DNA of 64,000 nt, taken from assembly GCF_030028105.1 (NCBI RefSeq), contig NC_092379.1:18887309-18951308 (forward strand). The letters run 5' to 3'. The position numbers and the translations under genes were made by a program. Below the pieces are notes generated by a model, which searched no databases, was not told where the DNA came from, and worked only from the letters and a program-made list of their open reading frames with translations. Positions 5,432 through 50,689 of the stretch are shown one piece after another (position 1 is the stretch's first letter; the number at the start of each line of letters is the position of its first letter). The stretch is from Mobula birostris. Taxonomy: Eukaryota.

Positions 5432-6233
5432 TGATAGGGACCCAGGACGGGCTAAAGTTCCAGCAGAAATGGAAAACACTTTGGAGTCCAGTATTGCTAT
5501 TAACTAATGGTATTTATTAGTAAGTACAGAATACAGTAATATAAATGCAGATATATCAAACAGGATTGCAATGATTATATATAAGTAAGTGTGGAAATAT
5601 ATGAAAACCAAGCTTCTTCAAGTCTAGGGGTAAATAGATAGTCTTATGATGATGAGTAAAGCTCAGTTCAGTTCGTGGTATTGAGTTGAGTGTTGATGGA
5701 GAGAGGGAGAGGGAGAGATTTGAGTCTTCAGGTGAGCTGATGCTGTCGATCTTCCCGTTGTCCTCCAAAATCCTTTAGAAGTCACCGACTGTGACCACAA
5801 CAAAGGGACCATTCTTCTGTGGTGGAATTATCAACCCGTGTGAGGGTTGGACACACAAATGACTCCCCACCGGTCACTCCCTTTTCACACTGTGAGAGCC
5901 GCTGATTGATCCGCCTGATCGATCCTCCAAAACCCACCTTTTCTGTGGGCACAACAAAACTCATTCAGTGTCCAAAACCATGTGTCTCCAGGTCTAAGAG
6001 CTGACCTTCTATTTATCTCGCTGTGCTGAATACTAGCTGTCCATCAGGCAGCTCCTCCCTCCTCTCTCTGCAAGAACACAGAAGCTGCCAGCGTCCCTGT
6101 AGGAAGTATAAACAAACTGTGAGCAATCTTTGCCTCTCTCTCTTTCTTTTTAACAAAGTGTCTGGTGTTGAGCAACTCCCTCTCTCTCTTTTCAAAAGCA
6201 CAGTTCATAGGGGTAATTAGAGACCCCATCACA
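5432..6233 (-). repeat. 5' LTR of the Gmr1-like element
   Basis: On minus begins TGTGATG and ends CCCTATCA (TG..CA); followed by TGGGGCCTGCATCTGGGAT, resembling a tRNA-Pro primer-binding site, then gag. Confidence 0.7.
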
Positions 6234-6249
6234 ATATATCTAACATGAT

Positions 6250-32700: not shown

Positions 32701-33010
32701 AGGCTTTTTCCCAGGACTGAAATGGTTGCCACAAGAGGGCACAGGTTTAAGGTGCTGGGGAGTAGGTACAGAGGAGATGGTATGTTTTTTTTTATGCAGA
32801 GAGTTGTGAGTGCGTGTAATGGGCTACTGTCAACGGTGGTGAACGTGGATACGATAGAGTCTTTTAAGAGACTTTTGGATAGGTACATGGAGCTTAGAAA
32901 AATAGAGGGCTATGGGTAAGCCTAGTAATTTCCAAGTTAGGGACATGTTCAGCACAACTTTGTGGGCCAAAGGGCCTGTATTGTGCTGTAGGTTTTCTAA
33001 GTTTCTATGT
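29790..33010 (+). mobile_element. Near full-length CR1 LINE (5' UTR, ORF1, ORF2 lacking most of the endonuclease, 3' tail)
   Basis: ORF1 from 30032 (CARCQMW...CTQC; IGDSIV; HIGTND) fused at ~30700 to ORF2 (GSDHN...; 428-aa RT ORF 30891-32177); (ctatgtt) tail ~33005. Confidence 0.9.
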
Positions 33011-33019
33011 TCCTATGTT

Positions 33020-34660
33020 AATCCCTTTACGGAGGCCCAATACTTCCTCCAACTTTACCTCGAAATGCCCAAATTTATTTGTACATTCAGCACTGATCTC
33101 TTGGTCATCCACATCTTTTTCCTTTGTAAATACTGAAGCAAAGTACTCATTAAGTACCTCACTCACATTCTCTGCATCCAAGCTGATATTCCCCCCTTTA
33201 TCATTAAGTGGTCCCACCCTCTCCCGAGTTATCCTCTTACCCTTGACTTATGTATAGAATGCCTTGGGATTCACCTTAATCTAACTTGCCAAGGACTTTT
33301 CATAGCCCCTGCTGGCTTTCCTAATTTCCTTTAGTTCCTTTCTGGCTTCTTTATACCCCTAATGTGCTTTGTTTGATTCAACCTTTACATACTTGATCTT
33401 TTTCTTCTTGACTAAACTCATCACCTCTCTGAACATCCAGGGTTCTCTTATCTTTGCATCCTCATCCTTCCTTCTGACAGGAACATACTTTTCCTGTACT
33501 CTGTGCAATTGCTCTTTAAACACCTTCCACATGTCTGATGTGAACTTGCCAGAGAAAAGGTGTTTACAATTAACAATTCTTGGTTCCTGCCAAATGCCCT
33601 TGTAAATTGCCCTATGCCAATTTAAAATTGTTCCACAAGGATAATACCTATCCTTGTCAATAGTTATCCTGAAAGTTAACGAGTTGTCACTCTTCCCTTA
33701 CTGTTCACCCACTGAAAGATCAGTCACCTGGCCAGGCTCATTCTCCAGTACCAGGAGCAGTATGGCCCCTCCTTTCATTGGACCATACACATATTGATTT
33801 GAGAAACCTTCTTGGATGCACTTAACAAATTCAGCCCGATCAGAATCCCTTAAACTCTCCCATGTAGCATCAGCAAATCTTGAAGCCAGGTTAATTGTTC
33901 CCCTGCAGTTCAGGTGCAATCCATCTCAATCAACCTGCATACTGAAATTCCCATTGATTATCTTAACATTGCACTTTTGACATGCATCTTCCGTCTCCCA
34001 TTGTAATTTGTAGACCACATATTTGTTATACTATTTGCAGGTCTGTTTCTAATTCCCATCAGGGACTTTCACCCTTGCAAATTCTTAGCTCTACCTAGAA
34101 CGGTTCTATACCATCTGATCCTATGTCACCTCTTTCTAATCATTTAATTTAATTTTTTACCAACACAGCCACACCACACCTTCGGCCTACTTCCCTGTCC
34201 TTTCGATACAATATGTATCCTTGGACATCAAGCTCCCAGTTATACAGTAATCTTCTTTCAGCCACAATTCAGTGATACCCATAATGTCATACATGCCAAT
34301 CTGTAGCTGTGTTACAAGTTCATCTAGCATAGTGTATTCCGTATACTATGTGCGTTCAGATATAACACCTTCAGTCTTGTGTTTATCACAGTTCAAAATT
34401 TTGTCTCCCTTTTACATTGTAACTCATCCCGTTGACGGCAATTTTACCCGAACATCAACTTCTTCTTGCTAGCAGTCTCACTACACACTGCTTCTGTTTG
34501 TAAACCAACAACTTGATCCTCAACCCTTTCACTTCATTTCCCATCCCCCTGCCAAATTTGTTCCAACCCTTCTGAACAACTCTAGCAAACTGGTCTGCAA
34601 ATCTATTTGCCTCCATCGATTCAGGTGTAACCTGTCCCTTTTCTACAGGTCATAACTTCT
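33020..34660 (-). mobile_element. CR1 ORF2 N-terminal fragments
   Basis: ENEPGQVTDLSVGE; GPLNDKGGNISLDAENVSEVLNEYFASVF. Confidence 0.75.
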
Positions 34661-34848
34661 GCTTACCAAGGCCCAGAGTCTTCGAGTAAAGAGGAAAGGT
34701 GTAAAGTTCCCAGGGGTTGTGAAGGGCTTCAGACTGCATTGTCTGTTGACTGTGCTGTCGTTGGGATTGCAGTGTCAGAGAATGCAATGTGAAGTAAGGA
34801 AGGTGAAAGTTTGGGTTTCATGGGAGTCTCTGTTAGTCACTTGGTTAC

Positions 34849-34991
34849 CTTGATAACGGTGACGAAGGTGCTGTAGAGGAAACTGACGATGAACAGAATG
34901 GCAAAGGCAGCAACTGTAAGCACATTGTCATCTCCATCCACGTGTCCCTGTTCTTCCTTCCCCTCCTCTCCTGTCAAGTCTGTGCAGATTC
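34849..34991 (-). CDS. IgW heavy-chain TM1 exon: (G)ICTDLTGEEGKEEQGHVDGDDNVLTVAAFAILFIVSFLYSTFVTVIK
   Basis: Acceptor tttctcaattctttcag|GA ATC; donor AAG|gtaacc; antigen-receptor TM motif F..LF..S..YS..VT; acidic spacer with one Cys; read-through of the donor gives VTK*. Confidence 0.9.
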
Positions 34992-36957
34992 CTGAAAGAA
35001 TTGAGAAAGTGAGACTGTTAGTTTCTTGTCGATGTTTCTTGAAGATCAACATGGCAATAAACTTGAGTAAACTTAATGACTCAAATCATGTTTCCCCACA
35101 GCATGTCATTTGTAACCAGGGAGCAGCTGGATAGAGCTAAATGAACTAGTTTCTCCGAAACGACTATGTTCGCTCCGTTAAAAATATTGACCAGATATTC
35201 ACTTAGCGTTCATTAAACATCATCCCAGTTTGTAATTTACTCTGGGAAGTGCATGTATGTTCAGCAGTCCCTCCAAGACAGTTTATCCAAAGACCTGCTG
35301 TTAGTTCCTGCGTATTCATTTCATTGATTATTATCTCTGCAGTTAAAGCCTTTCAGACTGCTAACAGATCTGCCAGCCTTGTGTGAGTGGCAAAGTTTGT
35401 CATGTGTGTTTCTGCCCAATATCTAAACCATGAATAAATCTAGTGAATAGTGTCAGCACTGAACACATTGCTGCAGGTCACAGGGCATCACTGTCTACAT
35501 ATTGTCCCTTCTTTCTGTAACCCTCCACTTTCTGAATGAGATCACTAAATGTCTTCACAAAGTTGATGAAATATCTTTCCCTGTCAATTACCTTTGTATA
35601 TTTGAAACTGCGGACCAATCCAGAATGTTCTGTCATCTGTACAGTAGAAACTAGAATACACATACACCTATAACCATTTGAATGTCTGTCTGCCTGTCTA
35701 TATAATGAAGGACAGAACCAACCAGGCAACACTTCCAGCCCCTCATGTTTGAGTCACACAGTTGTATCCCAAAACATACCGGCACGGAACACTGGCAGCC
35801 GAATGCTTTCCGTACCTTCTTTATTGAACTTTGATTGCACAAACACAGGCTGACATTCAACCTCTCATGTAGTCTACAGAAGTTTCCAACAGGATCAGAC
35901 CTGACACTAGGAAGTTTTTAAAAAAAACTGCAGGATCTCAGACATGTTAGTAATTTATTTTGATGTATTTAATCATGGAAATATATATTTCCATTTTGAG
36001 CTAATGAGAAAGAACTTGCAGGTAACCTTGCTTGTTTCAGGGAGATAAACCACATTGTTGTAGGATCAGCCACCAACTGGAGGTTGACCAGTGGGGTAGC
36101 TGGCCACGGGAATCTCTGCTGCAAAGAACTCAGTGACCTGACACTTGTCCTTTTATCTGATGAGGAAGTGTAGCTTTAGAGGGTTCCTACTGGGAATGGA
36201 CTTTTTTATTCATCTGAAGTTTTCCTGGAATATTCTGCTCTTACACCATTCAGGCTAATATTTACACCAGGAGTGATCTCTCCACATCTAAAATGTAAAG
36301 GCTTTTTACTTTTGGAAATGAAAGAGAAATTGTGGAAAGTGTTCAGTGGGTTAGAAAACACTTGTGAACAGAGAAAGGGATAACATTGAGAGAGCATCAC
36401 AAGTGTACTCTGTACCATTGCTTCAGCACTAGTTCTGTGCCTGGCTGAGTACTGTGCATCTCTCTGGTTTACTGGAACTCAACAACTGTCTGGTGTCCAG
36501 TTACATTCCACGATGCCTGCTCCAGTGAAACTCAGTTCCTCCAGTTCTGCTGACAGATAGACTTGCTTCATGTTTCTGAGATGCTGGTGTGAGAACATTG
36601 ACCCTGCAGTCATTATTTCATCATTCCCTCACTGACAAGGCCGGCATTCCTTGCTCTGCTCCAGCAGGTCCGTCACAGAGCAGTGAAGAGTTTGGTGTGG
36701 GAATTATGGATACAGGTAAACAGGGTAGGAAGGGCAGTGTCCTTCACCAAAGAACATCAGTGAAATAGTTTGTAATCTAAAACTGGCTTGAAGCATTGAA
36801 TGAACTCTGATTCTTTCCCACTCTCTGCCTCTGCATTATTAATCCACTCACACAACTACAACAATGCCAGACTTGCCGTTACCTATTGACCTTGCTTGTC
36901 CCTGGGTTGTGGCTGTGGCAGAGGATGTCAACAGTACAGTGAATCTCAGAATCATAC

Positions 36958-37281
36958 CTTGAATGTTTTTCACATCCTGCCTGACACTGGTGTTGGAGGG
37001 GGGATGAGACACTGTGCATCTGAAAACTGAGCCTTCCTTCCACTCCTCTGTGCTCACGGTCAGGTCGTAGCTGGCAATGAAAGTCCCTGCCTGTTCCAGA
37101 GCAGTTGGTCTCACACTGGTGTTGGAAGAGATCAGAGAGTCCCCTTTCTCCCAGGTGGCGGTTATTTGGTCCGGGTAGAATCCAGAGGCAACACACTCGA
37201 GGGTGACCGTGTTCCCACTGTTGGTCTCTCCCTCTGGCGGTGGCAGCAGTCTGACTTTGGGACTTTTTGTCTCCAGTGGAA
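36958..37281 (-). CDS. Ig heavy constant exon, IgW CH4-like (similar to IgNAR C3)
   Basis: 324 bp, phase 1-1, cag|TT CCA...CAA G|gtatga; KVRLLPP..TLECVASGFYPD..W..PTALEQ..EW..FRCTVSHPP; no stops. Confidence 0.92.
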
Positions 37282-37364
37282 CTGATGGGCAAACAATGGA
37301 AATGTCAAACATTTTTACTGAGGTAACCAACGTTGTCCATTTTAATCGCTGACCTCTTGCCCAC

Positions 37365-37667
37365 CTTTGGTACTTTTTGTCCGTGCTGATACTGGTGAGG
37401 TTGCAGAAGGTTGTTGGGCAGAGCAAGTGTACTCCACCCCACTGGTCCACTCCTCCACACTGGTCTGGAGTTGGCTGATCACTGTATCTTGGGTTCCTTC
37501 CTCTCTTGGTTTTTTGGTCACATTTGCTTTAACTTTCTCCCTCTCGTTCACCTTCCAGTGGATTTGGACCTGGCTCAGATCAGCACCCACAATCATACAC
37601 ACCAGAGTAGCGGTCTGGTTGATCCACATCTCTTCAATGGAGGGATTTTGGATAAAGACGGACAACT
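37365..37667 (-). CDS. Ig heavy constant exon, IgW CH3-like (similar to IgNAR C2)
   Basis: 303 bp, phase 1-1, tacag|AG TTG...AAA G|gtgggc; NPSIEEMWINQTATLVC..W..EEWTSGVEYTCSA; no stops. Confidence 0.92.
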
Positions 37668-38489
37668 CTGTAGATGAGTAATAGAAAACTTACAAACTGG
37701 ACGATATCTATTGTCAGCTGGCTTGACAACTTCAGCTCAGACTTATCCTGAAGCTCAACTTGTACATAATTGTACAATGGGGTGAAATCAGGTTTGTCTG
37801 CAGAGTGGGTTTGCTCATCTCTGTTTACAACCTTTGAATGAGAAAACAAAATCAAACATCAAGGAGCTTCTTTCCTTGGGACCCAGTTGGGTCACAACAG
37901 GGACTACAGGACAGTTGCCCAGCTACGTGACATTTAGCTGCTGCAATGCCAATCAAATGCACTATCAGAGCTGTCAATTGCAATGAGAGATGCAGTTTCT
38001 CATGAAAGATGACATTTCCTGAAATCTTCTTGTCTTGGAGCATGTGAGAGCCTGTAGATCCATTTGTGACATTGAGCTGAATCAATGAGCTGCCTCATAT
38101 CTGTTAGGACTGAGCCTGAGATTCCTCCAGAATGAAAATTCTGATGCTGACTTTCGAATCTCCCATGAAAAATCTCTCTTTTCATTTCTGTAACTTGCCT
38201 GCCCTAGTCAATGATCTCACTTTGTTCCAGTTGTCCTATTCACTTCATCTATTTCCATCTCTACACTTTAAACCTCCCTGCCATTCTATTTCCTGTGGAG
38301 TCTGCTTTTCACTTGCTGGACACTCATAGACATGGCTTTGTGTCCCATCATCCACATCATTAGTAATATCAGTGAATAGTTGCAGGGCGGACAAAGATCA
38401 TTGCAGGGCACTGCTCACGATTAAATCCTGCTGGGTTCAGTCCCCTGTCACATGACACAGTGATAATGGAGTTGTTGATGAATGATTGC

Positions 38490-40330
38490 AAACAATTTCA
38501 GTCCATTAGTCTACAGCAGATCCAGGCATGGTGTGGGGCAGCCACCTCAGGCCAACATCGGGCAGTCACTGGAAGAGCTGAGCGCCGTGATCAGTAAACA
38601 CGAAATAGCACACCCGGATATGAACCAGGACATCTTGAGGAAGTCTCTGAACAATGACCACTCACATATCTCCTGTGGAACCAGAGGAGCCAACACTTGA
38701 CCACTGTGATACCACCATCAACCACGGTTACCGTGCCAGCACATGGCCACACTTTGGTAAGGCTGATCACCTGGATGTACTTCAACTCCCAGCATATAGG
38801 CAGAGACTAAAGACCACAGTGTTGGTAGCAAGGACCAAGAAGATATCGTCAAGGAAGGCAGAAGTGCGCCGACAGGACTTTTGAGTTGGTGAACTGGATA
38901 ATATTACTGCACAACAATTTTTTCAAAAATGTTGCTTCCTCAGAGTTTTTTTTGTTTATGATAGACTGCTTGAAGTTGAACACAAATATAATTTCAGACT
39001 ACTTGGATCACGTAGGAATTTGGAGAAACAACAAATTAACTTTTATTGAATATAATGTGTTTAATTGCATAATGGTGCTGATGCTTTGCAATAGTTCAAC
39101 TAAGATGAAAATATTTTGTTAATGATTTTCATTTGTGCTCAATGTCTGCGGCTTCTTGCTTAACTGTCCAACAATAATCCACCAGCATTGATGGATTCCA
39201 GTTGCCCTGATATCTTTTCTCCATGACCGCAACGTCCTGGTGAAACCTCTCACCATGCTCGTCACTAACAGCACCAAAATTTGCAAGAAGTCTAAATGGG
39301 AGTGGAGAAAATGAATCTTTAGTGACATGTTGCATTTCAAGGTTTTGTATGCTTGAAGCATGCTTTCAACCAGCTGCATGTAGTTTGGTGCTCTATAGAT
39401 ACCGAGAAAAGTTTCAACAACTTCCTTGAATGACTTGTGATTTTCTCCGGTCCCACTAGAAATTCTTCAAATTGCCTGTCATTGATGACCTGTTTGATTT
39501 GTGGACCAACAAAAATGCTTTCCTTAATCTTGGCATCAGTTATTCTGGGAAGCATCTGTCTCAAATATCAAAATCCTTCATAGAAATGTTTGTGCCTGGT
39601 GATAACAAATTCCATCCTTACAGTCCTGAACCCAAAAATTATTACTAAAAACTGTCCTGCCATGCAGCAGCCGCGCCGCCTAAGCATGCCTGGACAAGAT
39701 AGGAATCTTTCCAGCTTACATTGTAGGCAACATTTTAATTGACTTGAATTATGAATTGAAATAATAAACATAGGTGACTTCAAAAATGGTGCGTGATAGG
39801 GAAATTTCATGATGATTTTCATGATCGGTAGCCCAAAATTCAAAAGATACAGCTAAAGGTATTCAGGAAGCAAGATCTTTGTTGTCCAGTGTATTCAGAG
39901 ACTTATCTTCAAATCGGAATGAATATGCCACAGTTGTCACCAACTTTGTCAAACCCTGTGTGGATAAGTGTGTGCCTTCAAGAACATACCGGACATACCC
40001 AAAGCAAAAGCTGTGGATGGACCAGGAGATTTGTAGTCTGCTGAGGGCTCGATTTATGGCAGTCCAGGCTGGTGATCTAGCATTAGACAAGAAGCCCAGG
40101 TACGACCTGCGGAAGGCTATTTTAAGAGTGAATAAACTCATCTTGGTCAAGATGATGCCAGAATGCAATCCTCGCTCGGTCAACCTCTTCCAGATAGCTC
40201 ATGAAGATATCCTTTTTTGGTCTTTTATGTCTGTTTTTCTCCTTAAATATGTTTCTGGGACTGTTAGAGTTAGAGACTGCGATTTTGATTGGAGATTGTT
40301 TCAGTGATCCAGTACCTTGCTGACTCTGAG
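38490..40330 (+). mobile_element. Rex1-like LINE ORF2 fragment split by a DNA transposon
   Basis: TRGANTLDHC...HFGKADHL...ELVNWII|FRDLSSNRNEYATVVTNF reads continuously once 38905-39894 is removed. Confidence 0.75.
38905..39891 (-). mobile_element. Internally deleted DNA transposon, Chapaev3-like, with TIRs and a 3-bp TSD
   Basis: Ends TACTGCACAAC.. / ..GTTGTCCAGTG; TAT duplicated at 38902-38904 and 39892-39894; transposase remnants MSLKIHFLHSHLDF, GAVSDEHGERFHQD..MEKRYQGNWNPSMLVDYCW. Family assigned from recalled motif. Confidence 0.7.
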
Positions 40331-41649
40331 AAGATCCTGAGCATGTACTCAGATCACCTCGATGCAATGAAACTTCAAGACAGGGTGCGAGCCGACGATT
40401 GACTCCATTTCGCCATTTAAAGCATTCATTAAGCGAGTGAACGTCTTGGCGCCGATGCCTGTCTTTTGATCGCTGCTGGAGATGGATTCTGTGAGCGGCC
40501 TTTTGCTTTGTGTCTTGCTGTGACAGGCGGGTCGGCCTCTCTGCCTCGTGTGGTGTCCCTCTCCTGTCTTTCAATGAATGTCGGTGATATCGGAGATGGT
40601 ATTGTGGTTCTGTATTTGTGGATTCGACTGTTGTGTTTATGGACTGTGGACATTTTCAGACTTATATTCTGTGTTTTTTATCGCCCGTTCCTTTTCTGTT
40701 TTGTAGTGTGAGGGGAGGGTGTTTGGGGGTCGGTGTTCTGTTAGCTTTTTGTGTGGGGGAGGGGTTGTTTTGTGGGGTCGGTGTTACTGTTCTGTTTTGT
40801 GAAGGGGGGTATCGGGGGGGGATTGATGATTGGGATGCCATTTTTGTCAGTGGGGGGATGGGGTGAGTTTCATGTTTCTCTCTGAACGACTTTCATGTTC
40901 TTTCTTGTTTTCGTGGCTATCTGGAGAACACAAATTTTAAGTTGTATGTGGATACAGGCTTTGATAATAATGAACCTTTGTACAATTCCAATTGAACTTA
41001 GTGAAGGAATCAGATGCCCTTCAGCTCTGTCAGACTTTTCAGGCCATTACTTCCTACAAGGTGAAACCTAACAACATCACTGTGATGTTGTTAAACATGT
41101 TTTTTGCAGGTTTCTCAGTTATGTCCCATATCAGCACTGTCTTGATGTTCAGCAGTCACTTGGAAATGTTCCCCTTATTGCTGAATGCTGGTGTTATTCC
41201 ACAAGAAGTATAGAATTCTGTCAATGCTTGAGTAATTCTAACAAAACATTCTTCTTTCTGGTATTCCTTGGGATCACTGAGTTGCCCTCTTGGACTGAAT
41301 TCAGTGTCCGGCACGTGGACCAATGTAACTTTAGCAATTTGTCTGATCCAGGATTTAAACACAAAGCATAACAGATTGGACAGGAGACTGGTTAGACCCC
41401 TGTGTCTTGTCTCACCGATTTGTCTTGTGCCCAACATTATCAAAGGGTCATCCGTCCTTTGACAGAGTCAATTTAGAATTTCAGCCCCGTTCACCTTCAT
41501 CACCTCATGCCTCACAGCCATTGGGTGAAAAACAGGTTCCAGTTCTTGCTGACTGGAGTTAGACAACAGGGAATCTGGCCAAAGAAACTGGAATTGGGAT
41601 CTGAGTCACACTGAAGCAACAATGTACACAAATGAATGAGTGTATGGAC

Positions 41650-42290
41650 AACCAGAAACACAGGAGATTCTACAGATGCTGGAAATCTTGAACAACACAC
41701 ACAAAGTGCTGGAGGAACTCGGCAAGTCAGGCAGCATCTATGGATGGAAATAAACAGTCGATATTTTGGGCTGAGAGATTTCACTGGTACAGGAAAGGAA
41801 GTGGGCAGAAGCCAGAATAAGAAGGTGGGAGGAGTAGAGAGGAATACATTCTGTCAGATGAGAGGTGAGACCAGGTGAGGGGGAAAGTGTGTGGATGGGG
41901 GAGGCAGTATGAAGTAAGAAGCTGGTAGGGCATAAGTGGAAGAGATAAATGGCTGAAACAGAAGGAATCTGAGAGGACAGTGGACCATGGAGGGAAGTGC
42001 AGGAGAAGGGGAACCAAATGGAAATGATGGGAAGGTGAGGAGAAACGAAGGGATGAGGGTGTATCTAGTATGAGGAATAGAATAAAAGGGAGAATAAAGG
42101 AGTGGGGGATCATTACTGGAAGTTAAAAAATAAGTATTCATGGAATCAGTTTGGCAGGTACCTGGATGGAATATGAGGTGTTGCTACTCCAACCTGACTT
42201 TGGCCTCACCATGGCAGTAGAGGAGCCCATGGACAGACATGACAGAATGGGAATGGAAAGTCAAATTGAAATAGGTGGCCACGAGGATAA
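41650..42290 (+). mobile_element. Penelope-like element terminal fragment
   Basis: cacacaaagtgctggaggaactcggcaagtcaggcagcatctatgga followed by a purine-rich tract; similar to ~62520-62600. Confidence 0.55.
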
Positions 42291-42809
42291 TAGAAATGTG
42301 ATTGGAGAGGTAGTCAGTTTCAATCGTGTTTTATTCTCTCTCTGTTAAACTTCAATCCCAATGGATACCAGAGGCAGGTCTAGAATCCAGTAAGTGGATA
42401 GCAATAAAATTCATTGATGAATTGTATACACAGCCAATCACTTTATTTCACACTTTCCTGCTGAACAATGATACTGTTGGGTAGAACCATCGGAGAATGT
42501 TGCATTGAGATTACTCTGGTAAAAGAACTTTGGCACAGGCTCCGAAAAACAGCTGGGACATTTTCCACCTGGAAATGGAAGATTCATAGATTTAAGTGTT
42601 AGATATTTTTACCTCTTTTCCCATGCTTGGAAAAAAGGAAGCCCCACATATTCCCACTCTGTATCCTTTGTATATCACATCCTATCAGGATGAGGTTTTG
42701 TCAGCCATGATAAATGAATGTGCTCTCTGAACCTGGTCGAGGATCTGAGGACACAAGGTCACAACATTCACTTGAGGATTGGGCATCAATTCAAAATTAA
42801 TCCCGCCAC

Positions 42810-42877
42810 CTACATTTCAGTGAGTGGACAATCGACAGAAGAGTCTGTCAGGAAACACTGGAAATAGACTCTGGAGA
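42810..42877 (-). CDS. Candidate IgW short-form secretory exon (xSRVYFQCFLTDSSVDCPLTEM*)
   Basis: ttttgtatttgtttcag|TC acceptor, phase 1; 21 codons with two Cys then TAG; AATAAA at 42442-42447 and 42330-42335; lies between the CH1 remnant and CH3. Confidence 0.5.
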
Positions 42878-43039
42878 CTGAAACAAATACAAAATTGCAG
42901 AGATATTTTTTTGAGGAACTAACACTGAGAAGACAGTGAAAAGGGAACAGGGAGATTTTCTCTAGAAGGTAAAACATGGGACGTGAGCTTTGCTCACTAA
43001 ATTATTTTCATTATAACTACAAACATAGACAACTAAAAT

Positions 43040-43501
43040 TATTGCACCAACACCGCCGGGTATTTCTTATTTTTTTTTAGCATGTCATACCAGACATTCA
43101 GCCATTCTTGTCTGGCACGTGGTGTCAGGATTAACCGGGTCACGTTATGAACGTTCCTGACTCGACCCTTATATATTTCTTACGAGGCCAAGTGGCTATC
43201 TCGACACTCAACCGGGCACGGATGGACAGCGTGCTCGGGAGTGGGGAAAGCGTGCTAGGGAGTGGCCTAACCAGGATTTGAACTCGGGAACATTCGCTCC
43301 AGAATCTGGTGCTGATCTCACTGCGCCACCAGCCGGCCTGGAATTTCTTAATTCCAGTGGTGATGTCCCCACTGTTAGTGGACCATGTCTGACTGATGCT
43401 CTCAGGCTAATAGTCCTTGACCAGACAGAGGAGGCTGATGCCTTGGTCAGATTCTGTGTTGCAGGAAGGAGTGATGTAGACTGATGGTGCGGACTTGACC
43501 T
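43040..43501 (-). pseudogene. IgW CH1 exon, inactivated
   Basis: cag|AG GTC: EVKSAPSVYITPSCNTESDQGISLLCLVKDY*PESISQTWSTNSGDITTGIKK; TAG at 43409-43407; SINE insertion; resumes KKYPAVLVQ* and the exon homology then ends. Confidence 0.88.
43070..43339 (-). mobile_element. tRNA-derived SINE inserted in the CH1 exon
   Basis: A box TGGCGCAGTG, B box GAGTTCAAATCC, poly(A) end; 11-bp TSD TAAGAAATTCC (43350-43340) / TAAGAAATACC (43069-43059). Confidence 0.88.
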
Positions 43502-46500
43502 CTGAAATGGAAAGAAATTCACAGGCGGTTCTCTGAATAAATGCATTACTGGCAGAGAAAGGAGACGTTTTATAAAGCAGTAATTTTCAAAATTATTCAC
43601 CTCATGAAACAAAGCTGATATCACTTTAACACTCAGCTGTGAGTCTGTGTCGCTGAGGTAGGAGGGTGTGGATCAATCCCACAGTGGCAACTTGGACTCA
43701 CAATCCAGGCCAACACTTCAGTGCAGGACTGAGGCAGTGACCCAATGTCCGATTGGTGGAATTTCAGCCAAAATACCAAAGTGACAATCTGTCTCTCCTC
43801 CAAATACAATTCCTGATTCGGAAAAGTCTGTTAGCACTTGATCAATGAAGTTTACAAAAAAAGTAAGATTTAGAAGTAACTTATTGGAATAATTCTGATG
43901 TGTTCAGTGTTGCTGTTGATGAGAGGAGTGATTGGTGTGGATATAGTGGTACCGAGTCTCCAGCACCATGTGTGCAGTATAGTGGAGGTTGGGAAATGGA
44001 CTCTGCTTCTGAAATTCAACTCAACAGACTACATGATGCAGCTGACACTGCCTCACATATTTACCGTGTGTGACTGAGCAAGAATTCCAACCCCACTGAG
44101 TCTGTGGAAACTACTGGCTAACTGGGAGGGAATGGTAACTTGCATCAGAAAGGACAGAGGAACTGTGGAAATACATTAGCCCAGACTCTGTGGAGAAGTG
44201 TCGGCCAACACAACCGACAGTGACGATGAGATTCCTGGGGAGATGGAGAATTCTCAAAGTGTTGTTAGATGTAGGTGATATTCTCACTGAACGACCAGCC
44301 CAGAGAGGAAATGCAGGTTGTAGCAATTCCCAACCACTTAAGGTGTGAAATACACTTGAAAGCACTGTTTCTTAATTCATTTCACAGGAAAAGGAGACGT
44401 GTTGACTTACTAAGGTAGGTAAAGGTGTGAAGATCAATTAGCTAATTGACCAATTGACAGCTTTGACAGGTGGATATGTGGTTTGACCAGTTGTCAGAGT
44501 TACCTTGAACAGTGTTGTGGACGGGGTTTGTTCTGACCCACTGACGTGACATCATTCACCTCATGATTGACACTGTCAATGACAGATTGTTGCTGGTGGA
44601 TGAGGTTAAAATCACCCAAAAAGACTGTGTGGACACAGCAGGAGCTCTGGGAGTAGGAGACTAGCGGGAGGGTATGTGTCAGACAGTGTGAATTGCAGTA
44701 GATGAGGGCTTTGTTGCCCAACAGTAAGATGGTCAACAGACACACACAGGCTTCAGATCGATTCTGCTATTGGAAGGGCAGCAAATTCAACATTTGGAGT
44801 GGAAGTGGAGTGGTGGGAAGGTCACAATTTCATTCAGGGGCAAAATAATGAAATATTCACTTCACAGTCATCACTCTGGGACAAAAGGCATAAAATATTG
44901 AAATCTGGGTTTCAAATAGAATGAATATAAATCAATAACTATCTCAAGTAGATAGGAATCGATATAATGTAACTGGTCAGTAATGACAGCTGCATTGTTT
45001 TGAACCATTTCAAGGTGACACTGGGGACTGTGAACTCAGAATATTTGCCTTCCTGAGCAAACACAGGTGATTCAGGTTGACAGGACAGGCAGAGCAGAGA
45101 AATGGTCCCTTTCTCATTCCTTTCAGACTGGGCCTGAAACAACCAGTGAAATGCTGACGTCAGACTCCCCATCGGGGACACAACTTCTGTCAAACAGTGG
45201 GACAAGCTGACCTGTGCTGTGATTGAAGTGTCACAGGAGAGAAAGCACAGGGCACGGTGCCAGCCGGACCATGTCCACACAGACCGGGCTGAATGGTGCT
45301 GGTTCAAACCTACTGGGACTCTCCCCACACTCCTACACTGGGAAAGGTGGGACCTCACTGGGTTTCTGGATGCTGGCGGCTTGTGTTGAGGTGTATCAGG
45401 GCCTCAGCATTAAATAGCCTCAGACAACACCCTGCTGGGACTCTGGGTCCAGAACACCCTGATGGGAGGGGTTTGTCTTGTGTTAATGCTGTCATGTAAT
45501 TAACAGGTTCAAAATGACTTGGAAACATTAAAGTTAATGTAAATTCCTGTGGCAACAATTAATTTTGCATATTTTGTTTAAAATAATAAATCTGAAATGC
45601 ATTAAAACATAATAATCAGACAGAAATCATTCCTGGATAAATCCCTTCCCAAGGCCCGGAATCCCCAGTCAGATGAATGGAAAATGTGATCCTTTGTCAG
45701 GTCCGGCCTGTGAGGGAAACGTGGAGGTGGATTTCCCAGTGTTACCCTGGGAATTCCAGCAGGACCTGGTGCCATGTGGTAGTGTGTGGTCACTGCTCTG
45801 GAGGCATATGTCACTCAGTAAATCCTGGGTTACAGTGGTCTGTGGAACTGTGAGATTGACTCCAGTGTAAGTGACTGAACACTAGTTGTCTCCTTCAGAC
45901 TGCCAGGCACAACCAGCACCATTTCACCCACACTATCCTCAGCTTCCCAGGTAGACAGTACCTCAGGAAAGGGCTGGTCAGCTGTAGTCTGAGGAGCCTT
46001 ACTGCTCTTTATCAGTGTCAACCCCTGACAGCAGGGGAATTGCTGGCCCAAAGACTAGGGACCATATGGATGGCCTATAACTAACTAGTGTTTGTCTATT
46101 CATCTACTGCATAGTCAGAATTCAGCTGAGGACTTCTCAGTGGTGGGGAACTTTAGGAATTGTAGGCCGAAAGTGACCATTCCCTTCCAACATCACCCAA
46201 GCGGACTAGATTGTCATGTCGTAGTTCAGTTTGTGGGAACAAGATGCAGACAAGTTGGAGGTTTAGTCCCCCACATGAAGTGACACACTGCAGAAGTACT
46301 TGCTGGGTTGGAAAAGGCTCTGGGATGTTCTGGGGTTGTAGAAGTCAATGAAAAACAGATTGTTTTCTTGAAAATAAATTCTGTAAAATAACACTGGAAA
46401 CAGCGTAGTTGCCAGAAATCAGACTGACGGAGTCTGGTGAAAGGTCACTGATGTGAAACATTCACTCTGCTTCTCACCCACAGATGTTCCCTGAGCTGCT

Positions 46501-46652
46501 CAGTGTCGGCAGTGCAGGAGGCACAATAATGTCAGTCGGTGAGATTTGCAGCTGAGGATCTTTTACATCCCGGGACCAGCAGGTGGTAAGTACAGTTCTG
46601 TCTGGATCAGTGATCCTCTGGGTCTTTGTAAAAACACCCAACAAACTGACTG

Positions 46653-46996
46653 CAGGGTGCTGGGGTGAAGAGAGGAACTGGATCTGGGTGGGTCACAGGG
46701 TGCTGGGGTGAAGAGAGGAACTGGATCTGGGTGGGTCACAGGGTGCGGGGGTGAAGAGGGGAACTGGATCTGAGTGGGTCACAGGGTGCTGGGGTGAAGA
46801 GGGGAACTGGATCTGGGTGTGTCACAGGGTGCTGGGGTGAAGAGGGGAACTGGATCTGGGTGGATCACAGGGTACTGGGGTGAAGAGGGGAACTGGATCT
46901 GGATGGGTCACAGGGTGCTGGGGTGAAGAGGAGAACTGGATCTGGGTGGATCACAGGGTGCTGGGGTGAAGAGGGGAACTGGATCTGGGTGGATCA
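46653..46996 (+). repeat. G-rich minisatellite, 8 x 43 bp
   Basis: Unit cagggtgctggggtgaagag(a/g)ggaactggatctgggtgg(g/a)tca starting at 46653, 46696, 46739 ... 46954. Confidence 0.95.
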
Positions 46997-49450
46997 GCTC
47001 AGAAGAAATTTGCAATGAAATAACACTTGGGAATTTGTACGAAATGATTGCCCAGAATCAGCAGATTGGGGGAGACTCAGTCTGATTTTAGTCTGTATTG
47101 TACTAAGTGGATAGAATATCGGGTAGTATGAACGAAAGATGGGCAGTTTTATTTATTCATCCTTTGGGATCTGGGCTTTGCCGGTAAAGTCTGAATGAAT
47201 TACGCATCTGAGCTGCTATTCAGAGGGCATTTGGAGACAAACACATTGATGGATCAGGAGTCATAAATAGGCTCGAAGGGTCAGGATGACAGATCTCCTT
47301 CCCTGAGGGACATCAGTAAAACTGAAGGGTCATCATTACCAATGATTGGATTTAAAAACAATACCAATTATTAAAATCTTGGAAATCCGACCACAGATCC
47401 AAATCTGTATTATGAACTGAGTATAAATTTGTCAATTTTGTTATGGTGGTATCCGTGGACTGTTCATCCATCCCTCTGCACTACTCATTTGCTTTGATGT
47501 ACTGTCCTGTTTCCAATCACTCCAAATCCAACCTTGTGCCTGTCCATTGGATCACTGTGTCCACGGTGTCCTGGACAATATTTCTCCTTCAATAACATCA
47601 CCAGAACAGACTGTCTGATCGTTCTCGCCTTGCCGTTTGTGGATTCTGCTGTATGCAGAGTGGCTCCACATTCCCGACTCTACAACAGGGCTGTACTTTG
47701 AAACAACTTCATTGCCTGTGAAGACCTCGGGGGCACCATGAAAGGTGCTCTGTAAATGTCAGCACTTTATCTCACAACCACTTTTACTGAATCACCAGCA
47801 ACACTGGTTAACGTAGGAAAACACTTGTTAAACAAACCCAGTCGGGGGATGGAGGAGGACAAGAAATTAGATGAGTTGCTCTGTCTGTGAACTAAGAATA
47901 AACAGTTCATTTGAACAGTAAAGTTCAACTCGTGTCCCGTGAGTGTGTGATGGGACAGGTTGGGGGAAGCTTCACTCTGTGTCTAATCTCTGCTGCCCCT
48001 GTCCTGGGAGGGATGGGACAGTGCAGAAGGATCTTTGTATCTAATCCGTGGCTGCCAGGACAGGACATGGGAGCTGTGATCTGCATTTAACTCATGCTCT
48101 GTGTACTCTGGGGTGCTTGTTGGAATCCCTTTGAGGAAGAATTTCCCAGATTTACAAGATAAATACTGATTCCATTGAATGATAGAGCAGAGAGTGAGGC
48201 CGTTCATCCTATTGTTTCTGTGCTTCATTTAGCTGAGCAAACCCAATAGACCCATTGGTCTCTCTGCTCTTCCCTGTATCCCTACAAAAGGCGGATCTCA
48301 TCCTGTTCCCTCTCCACACTCACTATTGGCCATCACCATCATTCAGGCAGTGTGTCCCAGATCACAAACCTTCATCAACAAACCTTCCCTTAAATGCTCC
48401 CCTATTACACATTATTGAATTGAACGCTTCCCTCCCCACCCCACCTGCACCACTCCCCACTCCCCCACCCAACAATGCAAGGCTGCCCGGAACGTGTGAA
48501 GGAATTGAGATTTCAGTTCCCCGCCTTACCTTTCCTGCACCACTTCCCCACTGCCTTCCCAACTCCAAAAATCTTCCCCACAGTACCCCACCTCCTCGCC
48601 CATCAGGGAATAAAACTAAAACCTCAATTCCATCAATTAATCCTGGGATATCGCCGATACTTTTGCTGTATCCCAGGACGGACCTCATGCCGGACATTAC
48701 ATGATGGGACTGACACCCACCTGTACCCTGGGGATATTGAGACATCAACCAGATCATACATGTGTACACCGTTCCCTCAGATTATGTCTGAATCCCATTA
48801 CCTTCAACATGAAAGCAGCCGACAGTAAAACCCAATCCCAGTAATTTGACACCGAACAGATCCATTGTTGTCACTGACAGGGAACAAGTTCAACTGCACT
48901 GAAACGCTCAGCCCCTGAACGTGGCTTCAGTCGGTGCTGAGGATCAGAAGCCAGACTTGAACCAAACACTGAGCTCACTCAGCACAATCGGCCGGTGTCA
49001 AGGCACAGTCTGGTGACAAGATCCGACCCCATTCCCCTGAGCCTGTTCCCGGTCTGTGGACAGTGCACTGGTGGGTGGGGTGTGTACCCTTGTACTGTTA
49101 CTGTGCTCTAGAGAAACCCGCCGGTTCGGGGAGATTCATGTACTTTCTCTAAATATCAACATGATCCCTGTCCGGACCGGGAGCAGCCGCTTCCAGGATT
49201 TCCATCCCAAACTCTGTCCTTGTCTCTTGTTGGCGTGTGAGTAAAGGCATTTTCACAATTTCCCTGTCTGCGGACACCGGCTCCCGCCATCCCCCAGAAT
49301 CAGAGTCAAATCCTTTTGGGCTTTTAATTGTCCAGAAATGGGCATTTGCGCCCAGCAGTCCGAGTAAGGCTTCAGGGATTTGACTCTGGGAAGCAGCAAT
49401 GCGGAATCCGTGGAGACAGACTGCGCTGCAGACGCTCCTTTGTCGGGACC

Positions 49451-49478
49451 AATTTCTGTTCAGCTCCCCATCACCGTG
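49451..49478 (-). promoter_or_regulatory. Recombination signal sequence with 12-bp spacer
   Basis: CACGGTG-ATGGGGAGCTGA-ACAGAAATT; no nonamer at a 22 or 23 bp spacing. Confidence 0.8.
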
Positions 49479-49487
49479 CTCCCACCC
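49479..49487 (-). other. D-like segment (GGGTGGGAG) fused in frame to VH
   Basis: Lies between TGT GCG AGA (CAR) and a 12-RSS; encodes GWE. Confidence 0.65.
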
Positions 49488-49783
49488 TCTCGCACAGTAA
49501 TAGGTGGCAGTGTCGTCCAGTCTCAGGTTGTTCATTTGCAGATAGACGGTGCTGCTGTCCTTGGAAACAGTGAACCGGCTCTGGACTCCAGGCGCGTTGT
49601 ACTTGTTACCACCACTCGATATGTCTGCCAGCCACTCCAGCCCTTTCCCGGAGACCTGTCTCACCCAGTCCATGCTATAGCTGCCGAGGCTGAACCCACT
49701 GACCGCACAGTCAGTCTGTGAGAATGTCCGGGCTTTACCACAAGCTGACTCGGGCTGTGTCAGCACGACGGCGGACCGCACGC
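49488..49783 (-). CDS. IGHV: Ig heavy-chain variable exon (VH), IgW cluster
   Basis: ttgacag|GC GTG CGG TCC; AVVLTQPES...C22...[14 protein letters not shown]...[31 protein letters not shown]. Confidence 0.95.
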
Positions 49784-49892
49784 CTGTCAATAAAAAAGAG
49801 CAGAAATTAATAAAATGTTCTACGGTCAGGGGTTCACAAAGCCTCTGAGAAACAGCCGGTCCCGGTTGAGCGACAAGCGGCGGGACACCCAC

Positions 49893-49938
49893 CTGCCAGA
49901 CAAGACAAGGGAAGACAGAAATAAGGCACGACCCCCAT
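49893..49938 (-). CDS. VH leader exon ([16 protein letters not shown])
   Basis: 46-bp phase-1 exon, donor G|gtgggt, 109-bp intron to VH; joined leader ends in GVRS. Confidence 0.85.
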
Positions 49939-49939
49939 C

Positions 49940-50160
49940 GCCCTGAACACTGAGCCGGACTTGGACACTTTGAGATCGGCGGCTTCAGCTCAGGCCGGCT
50001 TTGTCCGGAGTCGCAGTGAGCGCTGTTTAGATAGGGACGTGGGCTGTGAGTGAGAGAGGGAGCCGCGGTTTGAACAGGCTCTCACACACTGAAACCAGAG
50101 GCGCAGCTTCCTGTCCCCACCCACAGCAGCGATTTCAATTCCCCAAAAGATGTTTGTCTC
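49940..50160 (-). promoter_or_regulatory. Putative VH promoter
   Basis: TATA-like TATCTAAA (50033-50026), ETS-like CAGGAAG (50113-50107), CpG-rich; no ATGCAAAT octamer seen. Confidence 0.4.
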
Positions 50161-50689
50161 TGCAACAGGCGGCAGGTCAGCGGCAGTGACCAGATCCGGA
50201 TTAAAGATCGGTCACTCTCTGTTCGATTCATCAATTTCAGCGATGAACAGTTTGTTTAAACTGAAACACACAGAATCCCAGCGAGAGAGAATGAGAGACA
50301 CCAGTCAGTGGACAGATATCCCCCGGGAGACAGGGACTGAGAGACCAGTCAATGGACAGATATTCTCCTTAGAGACATAGGCTGAGACTGTCTTTGCAGG
50401 AAAATGTATGAAGCAACAAAAAGAGTTACCACACAATCTTCTCACTGCTCCCACACCACAAGAATCAATGCTAAACAGCGATTCCTGGTGGAAATGGGTG
50501 GAATTTACACTTATAAGGTATTTTCTCTTTCAGGGACTTGGCACCATGAATTTCAGTGCCAAGCCCTCAGCAGTTCTCCCCACAAAATCTTTTTAACCTG
50601 TTTCAGTGTGATACTGGTTGAGGGATCAATGTCGGAACAGATAGTGGAGAACTTTCCAAACCTTTTATGTCCACCTGACACAACAACCC

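What the first reader, a model, noticed from the sequence alone, without database searches (positions are those of the whole stretch)
49451..49497. Germline-joined V-D: VH ends in a D-like tail and a 12-RSS rather than a 23-RSS
Seen: CAR is followed directly by GGGTGGGAG and CACGGTG-12-ACAGAAATT. Known: in cartilaginous-fish IgH clusters V carries a 22/23-RSS, the last D carries a 3' 12-RSS, and RAG-made germline-joined VD/VDJ clusters exist. Inference: RAG acted in the germline here and left an in-frame, invariant V-D(D) poised to join a 23-RSS JH.
Basis: partly seen in the sequence, partly recalled or inferred. Interest (0 to 1): 0.8.

Follow-up and report, generated by a model that had tools for sequence, protein, structure and literature searches.

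The report
Half-joined, J-less manta antibody gene
In this giant manta ray antibody (IgW) gene the V piece is already fused to D remnants in the inherited DNA, a state long known in sharks and rays, and this copy has also lost its J piece and other parts, so it is most likely a decaying gene.

Summary
On the minus strand a VH exon ends TGTGCGAGAG, then GGTGGGAG, then CACGGTG-12-ACAGAAATT (49478-49451). The genome is Mobula birostris, and the cluster is IgW.

Three sawfish (Pristis pectinata) IgW loci settle the reading. The unjoined sawfish cluster is V-23RSS, 12-D1-23, 12-D2-12, 23-J. The manta window is collinear with it at 77-82% identity. It differs in two ways:
- 858 nt, from the V 23-RSS through the D2 coding sequence, are replaced by 8 nt.
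- 214 nt holding the J RSS, J and the start of the intron are missing, at a 7-nt microhomology (GATATTT, 49157-49151).

It is not "poised":
- J is deleted.
- FR1 carries a compensated +1/-1 frameshift.
- The nonamer carries a base that most related manta contigs lack.
- CH1 has a stop codon, and CH2 is absent.

The joint is multi-copy in manta DNA (about 6-8 loci by contig depth). It was therefore probably inherited by cluster duplication rather than made at this locus.

This scan has already noted at least six other VD-12RSS IgW clusters on the same chromosome. Germline-joined VD-J genes have been known in cartilaginous fishes since the 1980s. Verdict: a new member of a known kind, of low to moderate interest.

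The parts
49893..49938 (-). Leader exon (ATG 49938-49936; GT donor 49892-49891)
   Evidence: [16 protein letters not shown] matches batoid IgW leaders. It is also part of the NCBI gene model P0002.
49487..49783 (-). VH exon, ending TGT GCG AGA G. One nt is trimmed relative to the manta germline V end GCGAGAGA.
   Evidence: It aligns to sawfish V at 81-83%. Paralogue V ends come from the DNA contigs.
49710..49743 (-). FR1 segment read out of frame. A +1 insertion (TT at 49743/49742) and a -1 deletion (between 49711 and 49710) turn [11 protein letters not shown] into [11 protein letters not shown].
   Evidence: Frame comparison, DNA alignment to sawfish V, and near-identical RNA contigs lacking the extra T (table 4).
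49479..49486 (-). GGTGGGAG: D1/D2-derived (and possibly N) nucleotides of the germline V-D-D coding joint
   Evidence: It replaces 858 nt of sawfish L002 (4460-5317). GGGTGG is the 3' end of D1 in L003. GGAG is the 3' end of the unjoined D2 of the related species.
49451..49478 (-). 3' 12-RSS of D2: CACGGTG, ATGGGGAGCTGA, ACAGAAATT. Most related manta RNA contigs have C at nonamer position 8 (49452).
   Evidence: The 49452 A>G variant is, table 3.
49158..49450 (-). D2-J intergenic sequence, retained
   Evidence: 82% identical to L001 10745-11069, L002 5318-5642 and L003 3899-4214.
49151..49157 (-). GATATTT: junction of the J deletion. 214 nt of the sawfish cluster (J 23-RSS, J coding, about 90 nt of intron) are absent here.
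   Evidence: Alignment A1 and blastn blocks. J-bearing manta copies diverge exactly here into TGCTGAGATTATTGGATGTGACGGGCAAGT, which matches the sawfish sequence that begins about 60 nt upstream of the J heptamer and runs toward its RSS.
43506..49150 (-). J-CH1 intron, collinear with sawfish. It holds a 43-nt tandem array at 46567-47039 and a block at 45747-45967 that a stingray gene model uses as an exon.
43335..43505 (-). CH1 pseudo-exon. It has an in-frame TAG at 43409-43407 (LVKDY*PESISQTW), and its second half is degenerate.
42441..42569 (-). Secretory tail exon of the short IgW (IgX-type) form. No CH2 lies upstream of it.
37366..37668 (-). CH3 exon, open, with good splice sites
   Evidence: 58-65% identical to IgW CH3 of P0110 and P0111.
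36959..37276 (-). CH4 exon, open, ending in the donor CAAG|GTATGA
34906..34989 (-). TM1 exon
   Evidence: 68% identical to the Squalus IgW transmembrane form.

Best explanation
This is an IgW heavy-chain mini-locus of the giant manta ray. Its V segment was joined in the germline of an ancestor to D1 and D2 by RAG-type recombination. The joint removed the V 23-RSS, both intersegment spacers and most of both D segments. It left V, 8 junctional nucleotides and the intact 3' 12-RSS of D2. The joined cluster was then copied to several loci.

In this copy a later deletion, not made by RAG, removed J with its 23-RSS. It lies between two GATATTT repeats. The 12-RSS therefore has no partner in cis.

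The copy has also picked up a compensated frameshift in FR1, a nonamer base that most related manta contigs lack, a stop codon in CH1, and loss of CH2. It is still transcribed as an unrearranged read-through RNA. It most likely makes no antibody chain.

Shown here: the two deletions, the homology of the RSS, the multi-copy joint and the defects.

Inferred: RAG as the agent, the order of events, and non-function.
For: Identity of the locus:
- The genome is M. birostris.
- The isotype is IgW, from the CH1, secretory tail, CH3, CH4 and TM exons.

Comparison with sawfish:
- L002 is unjoined and shows V-23, 12-D1-23, 12-D2-12 and 23-J.
- Window 50387-49487 matches L002 3575-4459, 49478-49156 matches 5318-5642, and 49157-47941 matches 5857-7075. 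L001 and L003 give the same picture.
- An 858-nt gap is replaced by GGTGGGAG. A 214-nt gap removes J.
- Sawfish L003 is itself a germline VD1-joined cluster. Such joins therefore occur in batoid IgW genes.

Manta and related DNA contigs:
- Paralogous V genes end with a CACAGTG heptamer and a 23-RSS-type spacer.
- An unjoined D has a heptamer on each side in the related species (5' spacer 12 nt; its 3' RSS is read from the homologous manta sequence).
- The joint-bridging contig has depth 59, against about 10 for single-copy contigs.

J-bearing copies: contigs of the RNA-labelled runs diverge at 49151 into sequence that matches the sawfish stretch just upstream of the J RSS.

Defects: FR1 indels, CH1 stop, no J.

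RNA: coverage continues across the RSS, and no joints were reported.

Literature: VD-J and VDJ germline joins made by RAG in germ cells are established (PMC5192425, PMC2193156).
Against: - The junction is only 8 nt, so assigning bases to D1, D2 or N is not secure.
- No manta unjoined cluster could be read at length. The manta, M. hypostoma and stingray assemblies were too large to fetch. The parent structure is therefore inferred from sawfish plus short contig ends.
- The tissue of origin of the DNA runs is unknown.
- Contig depth is only a rough guide to copy number.
- The V reading frame is open, because the two FR1 indels compensate each other. CH3, CH4 and TM1 are also open. Total loss of function is therefore not proven.
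- Logan contigs drop rare variants. Rare rearranged transcripts could have been missed.
Confidence: 0.88

Rival explanations
1. The sequence after CAR is not an RSS but a decayed J. On this reading the gene is a germline VDJ join: in another frame it reads [11 protein letters not shown], close to FR4 WGAGTSLTVTS.
For: The frame-3 translation [11 protein letters not shown] matches sawfish model P0023 (RWWGAEHKLVPT) in 10 of 12 residues. That model uses the stretch as an exon spliced to CH2.
Against: - In all three sawfish loci this stretch lies directly 3' of D2. The true J (YLEYWGKGTSLTVTS, with a 23-RSS and a donor) lies about 370 nt further on.
- In the related species the stretch follows a D flanked by mirrored heptamers.
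- The gene models appear to use RSS heptamers as splice sites (inferred from the protein sequences and the locus DNA).
Confidence: 0.02
2. The 12-RSS arose in place from the V's own 23-RSS by an 11-nt spacer deletion. GGGTGGGAG would then be ordinary V-end variation, with no V-D joining.
For: A back-translated stingray/devil-ray 23-RSS spacer looked loosely like the 12-nt spacer (my own reading).
Against: - The real manta 23-RSS spacer (AGAGAGACCGGAACTGGACCGG) and the sawfish one are unlike ATGGGGAGCTGA.
- Everything downstream of the heptamer is homologous to the D2-J spacer, not to the V-D1 spacer.
- Protein-level tests against V-D1 read-through tails were at noise level.
Confidence: 0.01
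3. The VDD exon is still in use. Either its 12-RSS recombines in trans with the 23-RSS J of a neighbouring IgW cluster, or the GT inside the heptamer (CACG|GTGATG) serves as a splice donor onto downstream exons, giving J-less or chimeric chains.
For: - The V reading frame was kept open by a second, compensating indel.
- CAC of the heptamer and the A-tract of the nonamer are intact.
- The locus is transcribed.
- Stingray model P0026 reads YYCARDWGGYG and then continues into sequence homologous to window 45967-45747 and CH3.
- Another IgW cluster lies about 22 kb beyond the window.
Against: - No joint of any kind was reported in four RNA runs over 44000-49999.
- RNA depth does not drop across the putative donor.
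- The manta counterpart of the stingray 'exon' has a frameshift and a stop.
- Published work finds rearrangement confined to single clusters (PMC2435157, PMC5192425).
- The scrambled FR1 loses a core leucine.
Confidence: 0.07

Closest known systems
Germline-joined VD-J / VDD-J IgH clusters of cartilaginous fishes (horned shark IgM; skate IgM and IgX; reviewed in PMC5192425, mechanism in PMC2193156)
   Same: V is fused to D-derived nucleotides in inherited DNA. The V 23-RSS and the intervening DNA are lost, and the 3' 12-RSS of the last D is kept. The gene belongs to a multi-cluster family in which open and joined members coexist.
   Different: - The isotype is IgW, in a myliobatiform ray.
- The joined form has been amplified to several loci.
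- This member has also lost J, so the one remaining step cannot occur in cis.
Sawfish (Pristis pectinata) IgW clusters L001-L003 on CM019866.1
   Same: They are collinear with the window at 76-84% identity through the V, the D2-J spacer, the introns and the C exons. The D2 3' RSS is nearly identical: CACGGTG, GTGGGGAGCTGA, ACACAAACT.
   Different: - L002 is fully open.
- L003 is joined only V-D1 and keeps D1's 23-RSS, D2 and J.
- L001 has lost D1.
- All three keep J.
Other manta IgW clusters noted by this scan: VD-12RSS facing a 23-RSS J; clusters with a dead CH1 or without CH1/CH2
   Same: Same chromosome and the same type of V-D-12RSS end. Decay of CH1/CH2 also recurs.
   Different: Those notes describe a J downstream of the joint. 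This cluster has a clean J deletion. I could not read their sequences.

Membership tests
Germline-joined VD(D)-J immunoglobulin heavy-chain cluster of cartilaginous fish | V coding end abuts D-derived nucleotides, with no V 23-RSS | tested here: met
   TGTGCGAGAG+GGTGGGAG+heptamer. 858 nt of the open sawfish cluster are replaced by 8 nt.
Germline-joined VD(D)-J immunoglobulin heavy-chain cluster of cartilaginous fish | The RSS after the joint is the 3' 12-RSS of the last D, by homology to open clusters | tested here: met
   82% identity from the heptamer through the D2-J spacer to three sawfish loci. An unjoined D carries the same RSS in the related species.
Germline-joined VD(D)-J immunoglobulin heavy-chain cluster of cartilaginous fish | Open relatives exist with V-23, 12-D1-23, 12-D2-12 and 23-J | tested here: met
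   Sawfish L002. Manta DNA contigs end GCGAGAGA|CACAGTG followed by a 23-RSS-type spacer.
Germline-joined VD(D)-J immunoglobulin heavy-chain cluster of cartilaginous fish | The joint is present in germline (non-lymphocyte) DNA | tested here: inconclusive
   The joint is in the reference assembly. A bridging DNA contig has depth 59, against about 10 for single-copy contigs, which a rare somatic event could not produce. The tissue of the runs is unknown, and no second individual's DNA was tested.
Germline-joined VD(D)-J immunoglobulin heavy-chain cluster of cartilaginous fish | A J segment with a 23-RSS lies downstream in the same cluster | tested here: not met
   The 214-nt segment with the J RSS and J is deleted at 49157-49151. 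No WGxGT J occurs in the window.
Functional IgW heavy-chain gene | Intact V domain framework | tested here: inconclusive
   The reading frame is open, but 11 FR1 codons are read out of frame. Folding was not tested.
Functional IgW heavy-chain gene | Intact CH1 and CH2 exons | tested here: not met
   CH1 has a TAG at 43409-43407 and a degenerate second half. No CH2 lies between CH1 and the secretory tail exon.
Functional IgW heavy-chain gene | Rearranged, spliced transcripts in lymphoid RNA | tested here: not met
   Only read-through coverage was seen, and no joints were reported in four RNA runs. Contigs can miss rare forms.

The most novel reading that the evidence does not exclude
An orphan VDD exon with a conserved 12-RSS and a frame kept open by a compensating indel may still be used. 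It could recombine in trans with the J of a neighbouring IgW cluster. Alternatively it could splice from the GT inside its heptamer onto CH3-CH4-TM, giving an invariant chain without J or CH1.
Probability: 0.06. Interest if true: 0.55.

Novelty: new member of a known kind. Interest (0 to 1): 0.25.

Why it matters
It gives a base-by-base example of germline V(D)J joining in a ray IgW gene. An open counterpart in another batoid order shows exactly what was removed, and the classic 23 / 12-23 / 12-12 / 23 RSS layout is shown to hold for batoid IgW.

It also shows what can happen to a part-joined gene afterwards: amplification to several loci, then loss of J and decay. That bears on the old question of whether joined genes are useful or are by-products of RAG activity in germ cells. 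It adds no new principle.

Tried and rejected
- **J reading of the RSS.** I read the '12-RSS' as a J remnant ([10 protein letters not shown]). The sawfish loci refute this.
- **12-RSS derived from the 23-RSS.** I considered derivation from the V 23-RSS by spacer deletion. The spacers are unlike.
- **Inversional join.** I considered an inversional V-to-D join, taking the G-rich element at 49060-49130 as an inverted D or signal joint. That stretch is ordinary J-C intron, conserved in sawfish in the same orientation.
- **Inverted V.** An 'inverted V' suggested by a 25-nt inverted repeat at 45953-45977 has no V-like frame.
- **J candidates.**
  - 49075-49020 is intron.
  - 48579-48524 has AGTTTTATT-23-TACTGTG, 49 nt and a GTAAGG donor. 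It lies in a G-rich repeat within intron that is collinear with sawfish, and has the lowest RNA depth.
- **V-D1 spacer test.** I compared the downstream region at protein level with V-D1 read-through tails. Scores were at noise level.
- **Pattern searches.** Searches for J and for the alternative contig flanks in the window gave no matches.
- **Fetching other loci.** Manta, M. hypostoma and stingray DNA could not be fetched because the files are too large.
- **Protein searches.** A protein search with the read-through tail found only the window's own model.
- **Earlier findings.** The search of earlier findings by sequence and by the heptamer word returned nothing.

Full report
**What is there**

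The minus strand carries these features:
- a leader exon (49938-49893);
- a 109-nt intron;
- a VH exon ending TAT TAC TGT GCG AGA G at 49487;
- GGTGGGAG (49486-49479);
- CACGGTG (49478-49472);
- a 12-nt spacer, ATGGGGAGCTGA;
- ACAGAAATT (49459-49451).

As a pattern the RSS is weak. It has 1 heptamer and 3 nonamer mismatches, and 24 sites in the window pass the same threshold. Its reality had to come from homology.

**Organism and isotype**

A protein search returns the window's own NCBI model from Mobula birostris (P0002). It also returns batoid IgW/IgX heavy chains.

tblastn with skate, sawfish, dogfish and a Logan IgW long-form protein places these exons on the minus strand:
- CH1 at 43505-43335, with an in-frame TAG (LVKDY*PE) and a degenerate second half;
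- no CH2;
- the short-form secretory tail exon at 42569-42441;
- CH3 at 37668-37366;
- CH4 at 36959-37276;
- TM1 at 34989-34906.

The cluster is therefore IgW.

**What paralogues look like**

Gene models from devil ray, stingray and sawfish read through the V end as CAR-D-TVRE.G..P.QKPSE. That is CACAGTG-23-ACAAAAACC.

Manta DNA contigs laid on 49380-49530 show paralogous V genes. They match up to 49487 and then continue A CACAGTG AGAGAGACCGGAACTGGACCGG. Ordinary V genes of this family therefore carry a 23-RSS.

In a second, closely related species (coded organism B), one contig matches 49380-49468 with one mismatch in 89 nt. Another contig of that species matches the window up to 49482 and then continues upstream. 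It reads TTTGTGG-CCTGCGGTGAAG-CACCGTG-ATAT before GGAG-CACGGTG. That is an unjoined D with a heptamer on each side and a 12-nt 5' spacer. Its 3' RSS is read from the homologous manta sequence.

**The decisive comparison**

Manta, M. hypostoma and stingray DNA could not be fetched. Three sawfish IgW loci could.

L002 is fully open:

| Element | Sequence |
|---|---|
| V | ...GCGAGAGA / CACAGTG-23-ACAAAAACC |
| D1 | CACAGTG / ACTATATACTGGATGG / CACAGTG-23-ACACAAACC |
| D2 | GGTTTGTGA-12-CACCGTG / ATATGGATATAC / CACGGCG-12 (GTGGGGAGCTGA)-ACACAAACT |
| J | AGTTACTGC-23-CAGTGTG / ACTATCTT...TGGGGGAAAGGAACGTCGCTGACGGTGACTTCAG / gt |

The manta window is collinear with L002:

| Window | L002 | Content | Identity |
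|---|---|---|---|
| 50387-49487 | 3575-4459 | upstream sequence and V | 81% |
| 49478-49156 | 5318-5642 | D2 3' heptamer through the D2-J spacer | 82% |
| 49157-47941 | 5857-7075 | J-C intron | 78% |

L001 and L003 give the same blocks.

**The two differences**

1. L002 4460-5317 (858 nt) is replaced by GGTGGGAG. That span holds the last V base, the 23-RSS, the V-D1 spacer, D1, the D1-D2 spacer, the D2 5' RSS and the D2 coding sequence.
   - This is a deletional V-D-D coding joint that keeps D2's 3' 12-RSS.
   - GGGTGG equals the 3' end of D1 as seen in L003 (ATAACTGGGTGG/CACAGTG).
   - GAG/GGAG equals the 3' end of organism B's D2.
   - With 8 nt the split between D1, D2 and N cannot be fixed.
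   - L003 is itself a germline VD1-joined cluster with D2 and J intact. Partial germline joins therefore occur in batoid IgW genes.
2. L002 5643-5856 (214 nt) has no counterpart in the window. That span holds the J nonamer, spacer and heptamer, the 48-nt J, and about 90 nt of intron.
   - The junction is GATATTT (49157-49151).
   - The sawfish right flank also reads GATATTT.
   - Manta J-bearing copies read GATATT|TGCTGAGATTATTGGATGTGACGGGCAAGT at the left flank. This matches the sawfish sequence that begins about 60 nt upstream of the J heptamer and runs toward its RSS.
   - The deletion therefore lies between two 7-nt direct repeats. It looks like microhomology-mediated loss, not a RAG event (inference).
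   - No J-like frame (WGxG..., LTVTS) exists elsewhere in the window.

**State of this copy**

- **FR1.** Relative to the sawfish V and to near-identical manta transcripts, the V has a +1 insertion (49743/49742) and a -1 deletion (49711/49710), 33 nt apart. The frame stays open, but [11 protein letters not shown] becomes [11 protein letters not shown], and the leucine two residues before Cys is lost.
- **Nonamer.** Position 8 is T here. It is C in most related manta contigs of three of the four RNA-labelled runs and in about 40% of depth in the fourth (49452 A>G on the plus strand), and C in sawfish.
- **C region.** CH1 is dead and CH2 is gone.

**Transcription**

Two of the four RNA-labelled runs (X7, X8) are deep. 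In them coverage continues across the RSS at a few thousand, against about one million on the conserved end of V. One contig with zero mismatches to this copy covers 49422-49482 at depth 361. No joints were reported in any of the four runs over 44000-49999.

This fits unrearranged 'sterile' read-through transcripts, as in the NCBI model. Such transcripts are described for shark Ig genes (PMC5192425).

**Copy number and origin**

In DNA contigs of the reference species, a contig bridging the joint (49453-49520) has depth 59. Neighbouring unique contigs have depth of about 10, and the summed depth at the joint is about 82.

Roughly 6-8 loci therefore share this joint. This matches at least six other first-stage notes of VD-12RSS IgW clusters on this chromosome. 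Two follow-ups called those clusters a known kind.

The join was therefore probably made once in an ancestral cluster and spread by duplication.

A stingray model ending YYCARDWGGYG hints at a similar joined form in another family. It continues into sequence homologous to window 45967-45747 and CH3. I could not read its DNA.

**Comparison with what is known**

Reviews state that cartilaginous-fish Ig clusters can be partly (VD-J) or fully (VDJ) joined in the germline. They attribute these joins to RAG acting in germ cells (PMC5192425; PMC2193156). Skates hold many joined heavy-chain genes (PMC2435157).

This finding is a clean new example in manta IgW, with a later J loss. It is not a new mechanism.

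**Verdict**

- The germline V-D(D) join is supported.
- 'Poised to join JH' is not supported for this copy.
- Novelty: a new member of a known kind.
- Interest: about 0.25.

Noticed in passing
window 34000-50400 versus L001, L002 and L003: The whole manta IgW cluster, introns included, is collinear with sawfish clusters at 76-84% nucleotide identity. The two species belong to different batoid orders. This is unusually slow divergence, or it reflects constraint on the intron sequence.
   Followed up: partly
window 46567-47039: A tandem array of about 11 copies of a 43-nt unit lies in the J-CH1 intron. Sawfish has about one and a half units at the homologous place (L001 13855-13927).
   Followed up: no
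window 45747-45967 (minus): A stingray gene model (P0026) uses this intron block as a coding exon between the V-D end and CH3. It is 71-76% identical at protein level. In manta it carries a frameshift and a stop.
   Followed up: partly
window 50280-50387; L002 670-3588: A repeat of about 47 nt lies upstream of the V promoter region. Manta has two copies. One sawfish cluster has a minisatellite of about 60 copies. There is no octamer ATGCAAAT near this V.
   Followed up: no
window 49472-49478: The heptamer CACGGTG and its mirror CACCGTG on the 5' side of D2 are conserved from sawfish to manta, with G/C at position 4. Gene models in sawfish and stingray appear to use RSS heptamers as splice donors or acceptors (inferred from the protein sequences and the locus DNA). 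No such splice joint appeared in the manta RNA contigs.
   Followed up: partly
L003 3447-3490: The sawfish cluster L003 is a germline V-D1 join: GCGAGT ATAACTGGGTGG CACAGTG, followed by D1's 23-RSS (22-nt spacer in this copy), with D2 and J intact. L001 has lost D1 and the 5' RSS of D2.
   Followed up: yes
manta DNA contigs laid at window 49486: Two DNA contigs continue from the V end into CTGCTTTTACGAGACTGGGACTGGGTCGAG. RNA contigs continue into CTGCTATTTCGACGAGTGG (YFDEW). These may be fully VDJ-joined germline relatives.
   Followed up: no
window 30032-32919 (+): Long ORFs of a LINE-type reverse transcriptase lie downstream of the TM exon region.
   Followed up: no
window 36959-37668; no CH5 or CH6 in the window: CH3 and CH4 are open with good splice sites, and TM1 follows at 34989-34906. 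No CH5 or CH6 lies between them, as in the dogfish four-domain transmembrane IgW form.
   Followed up: partly
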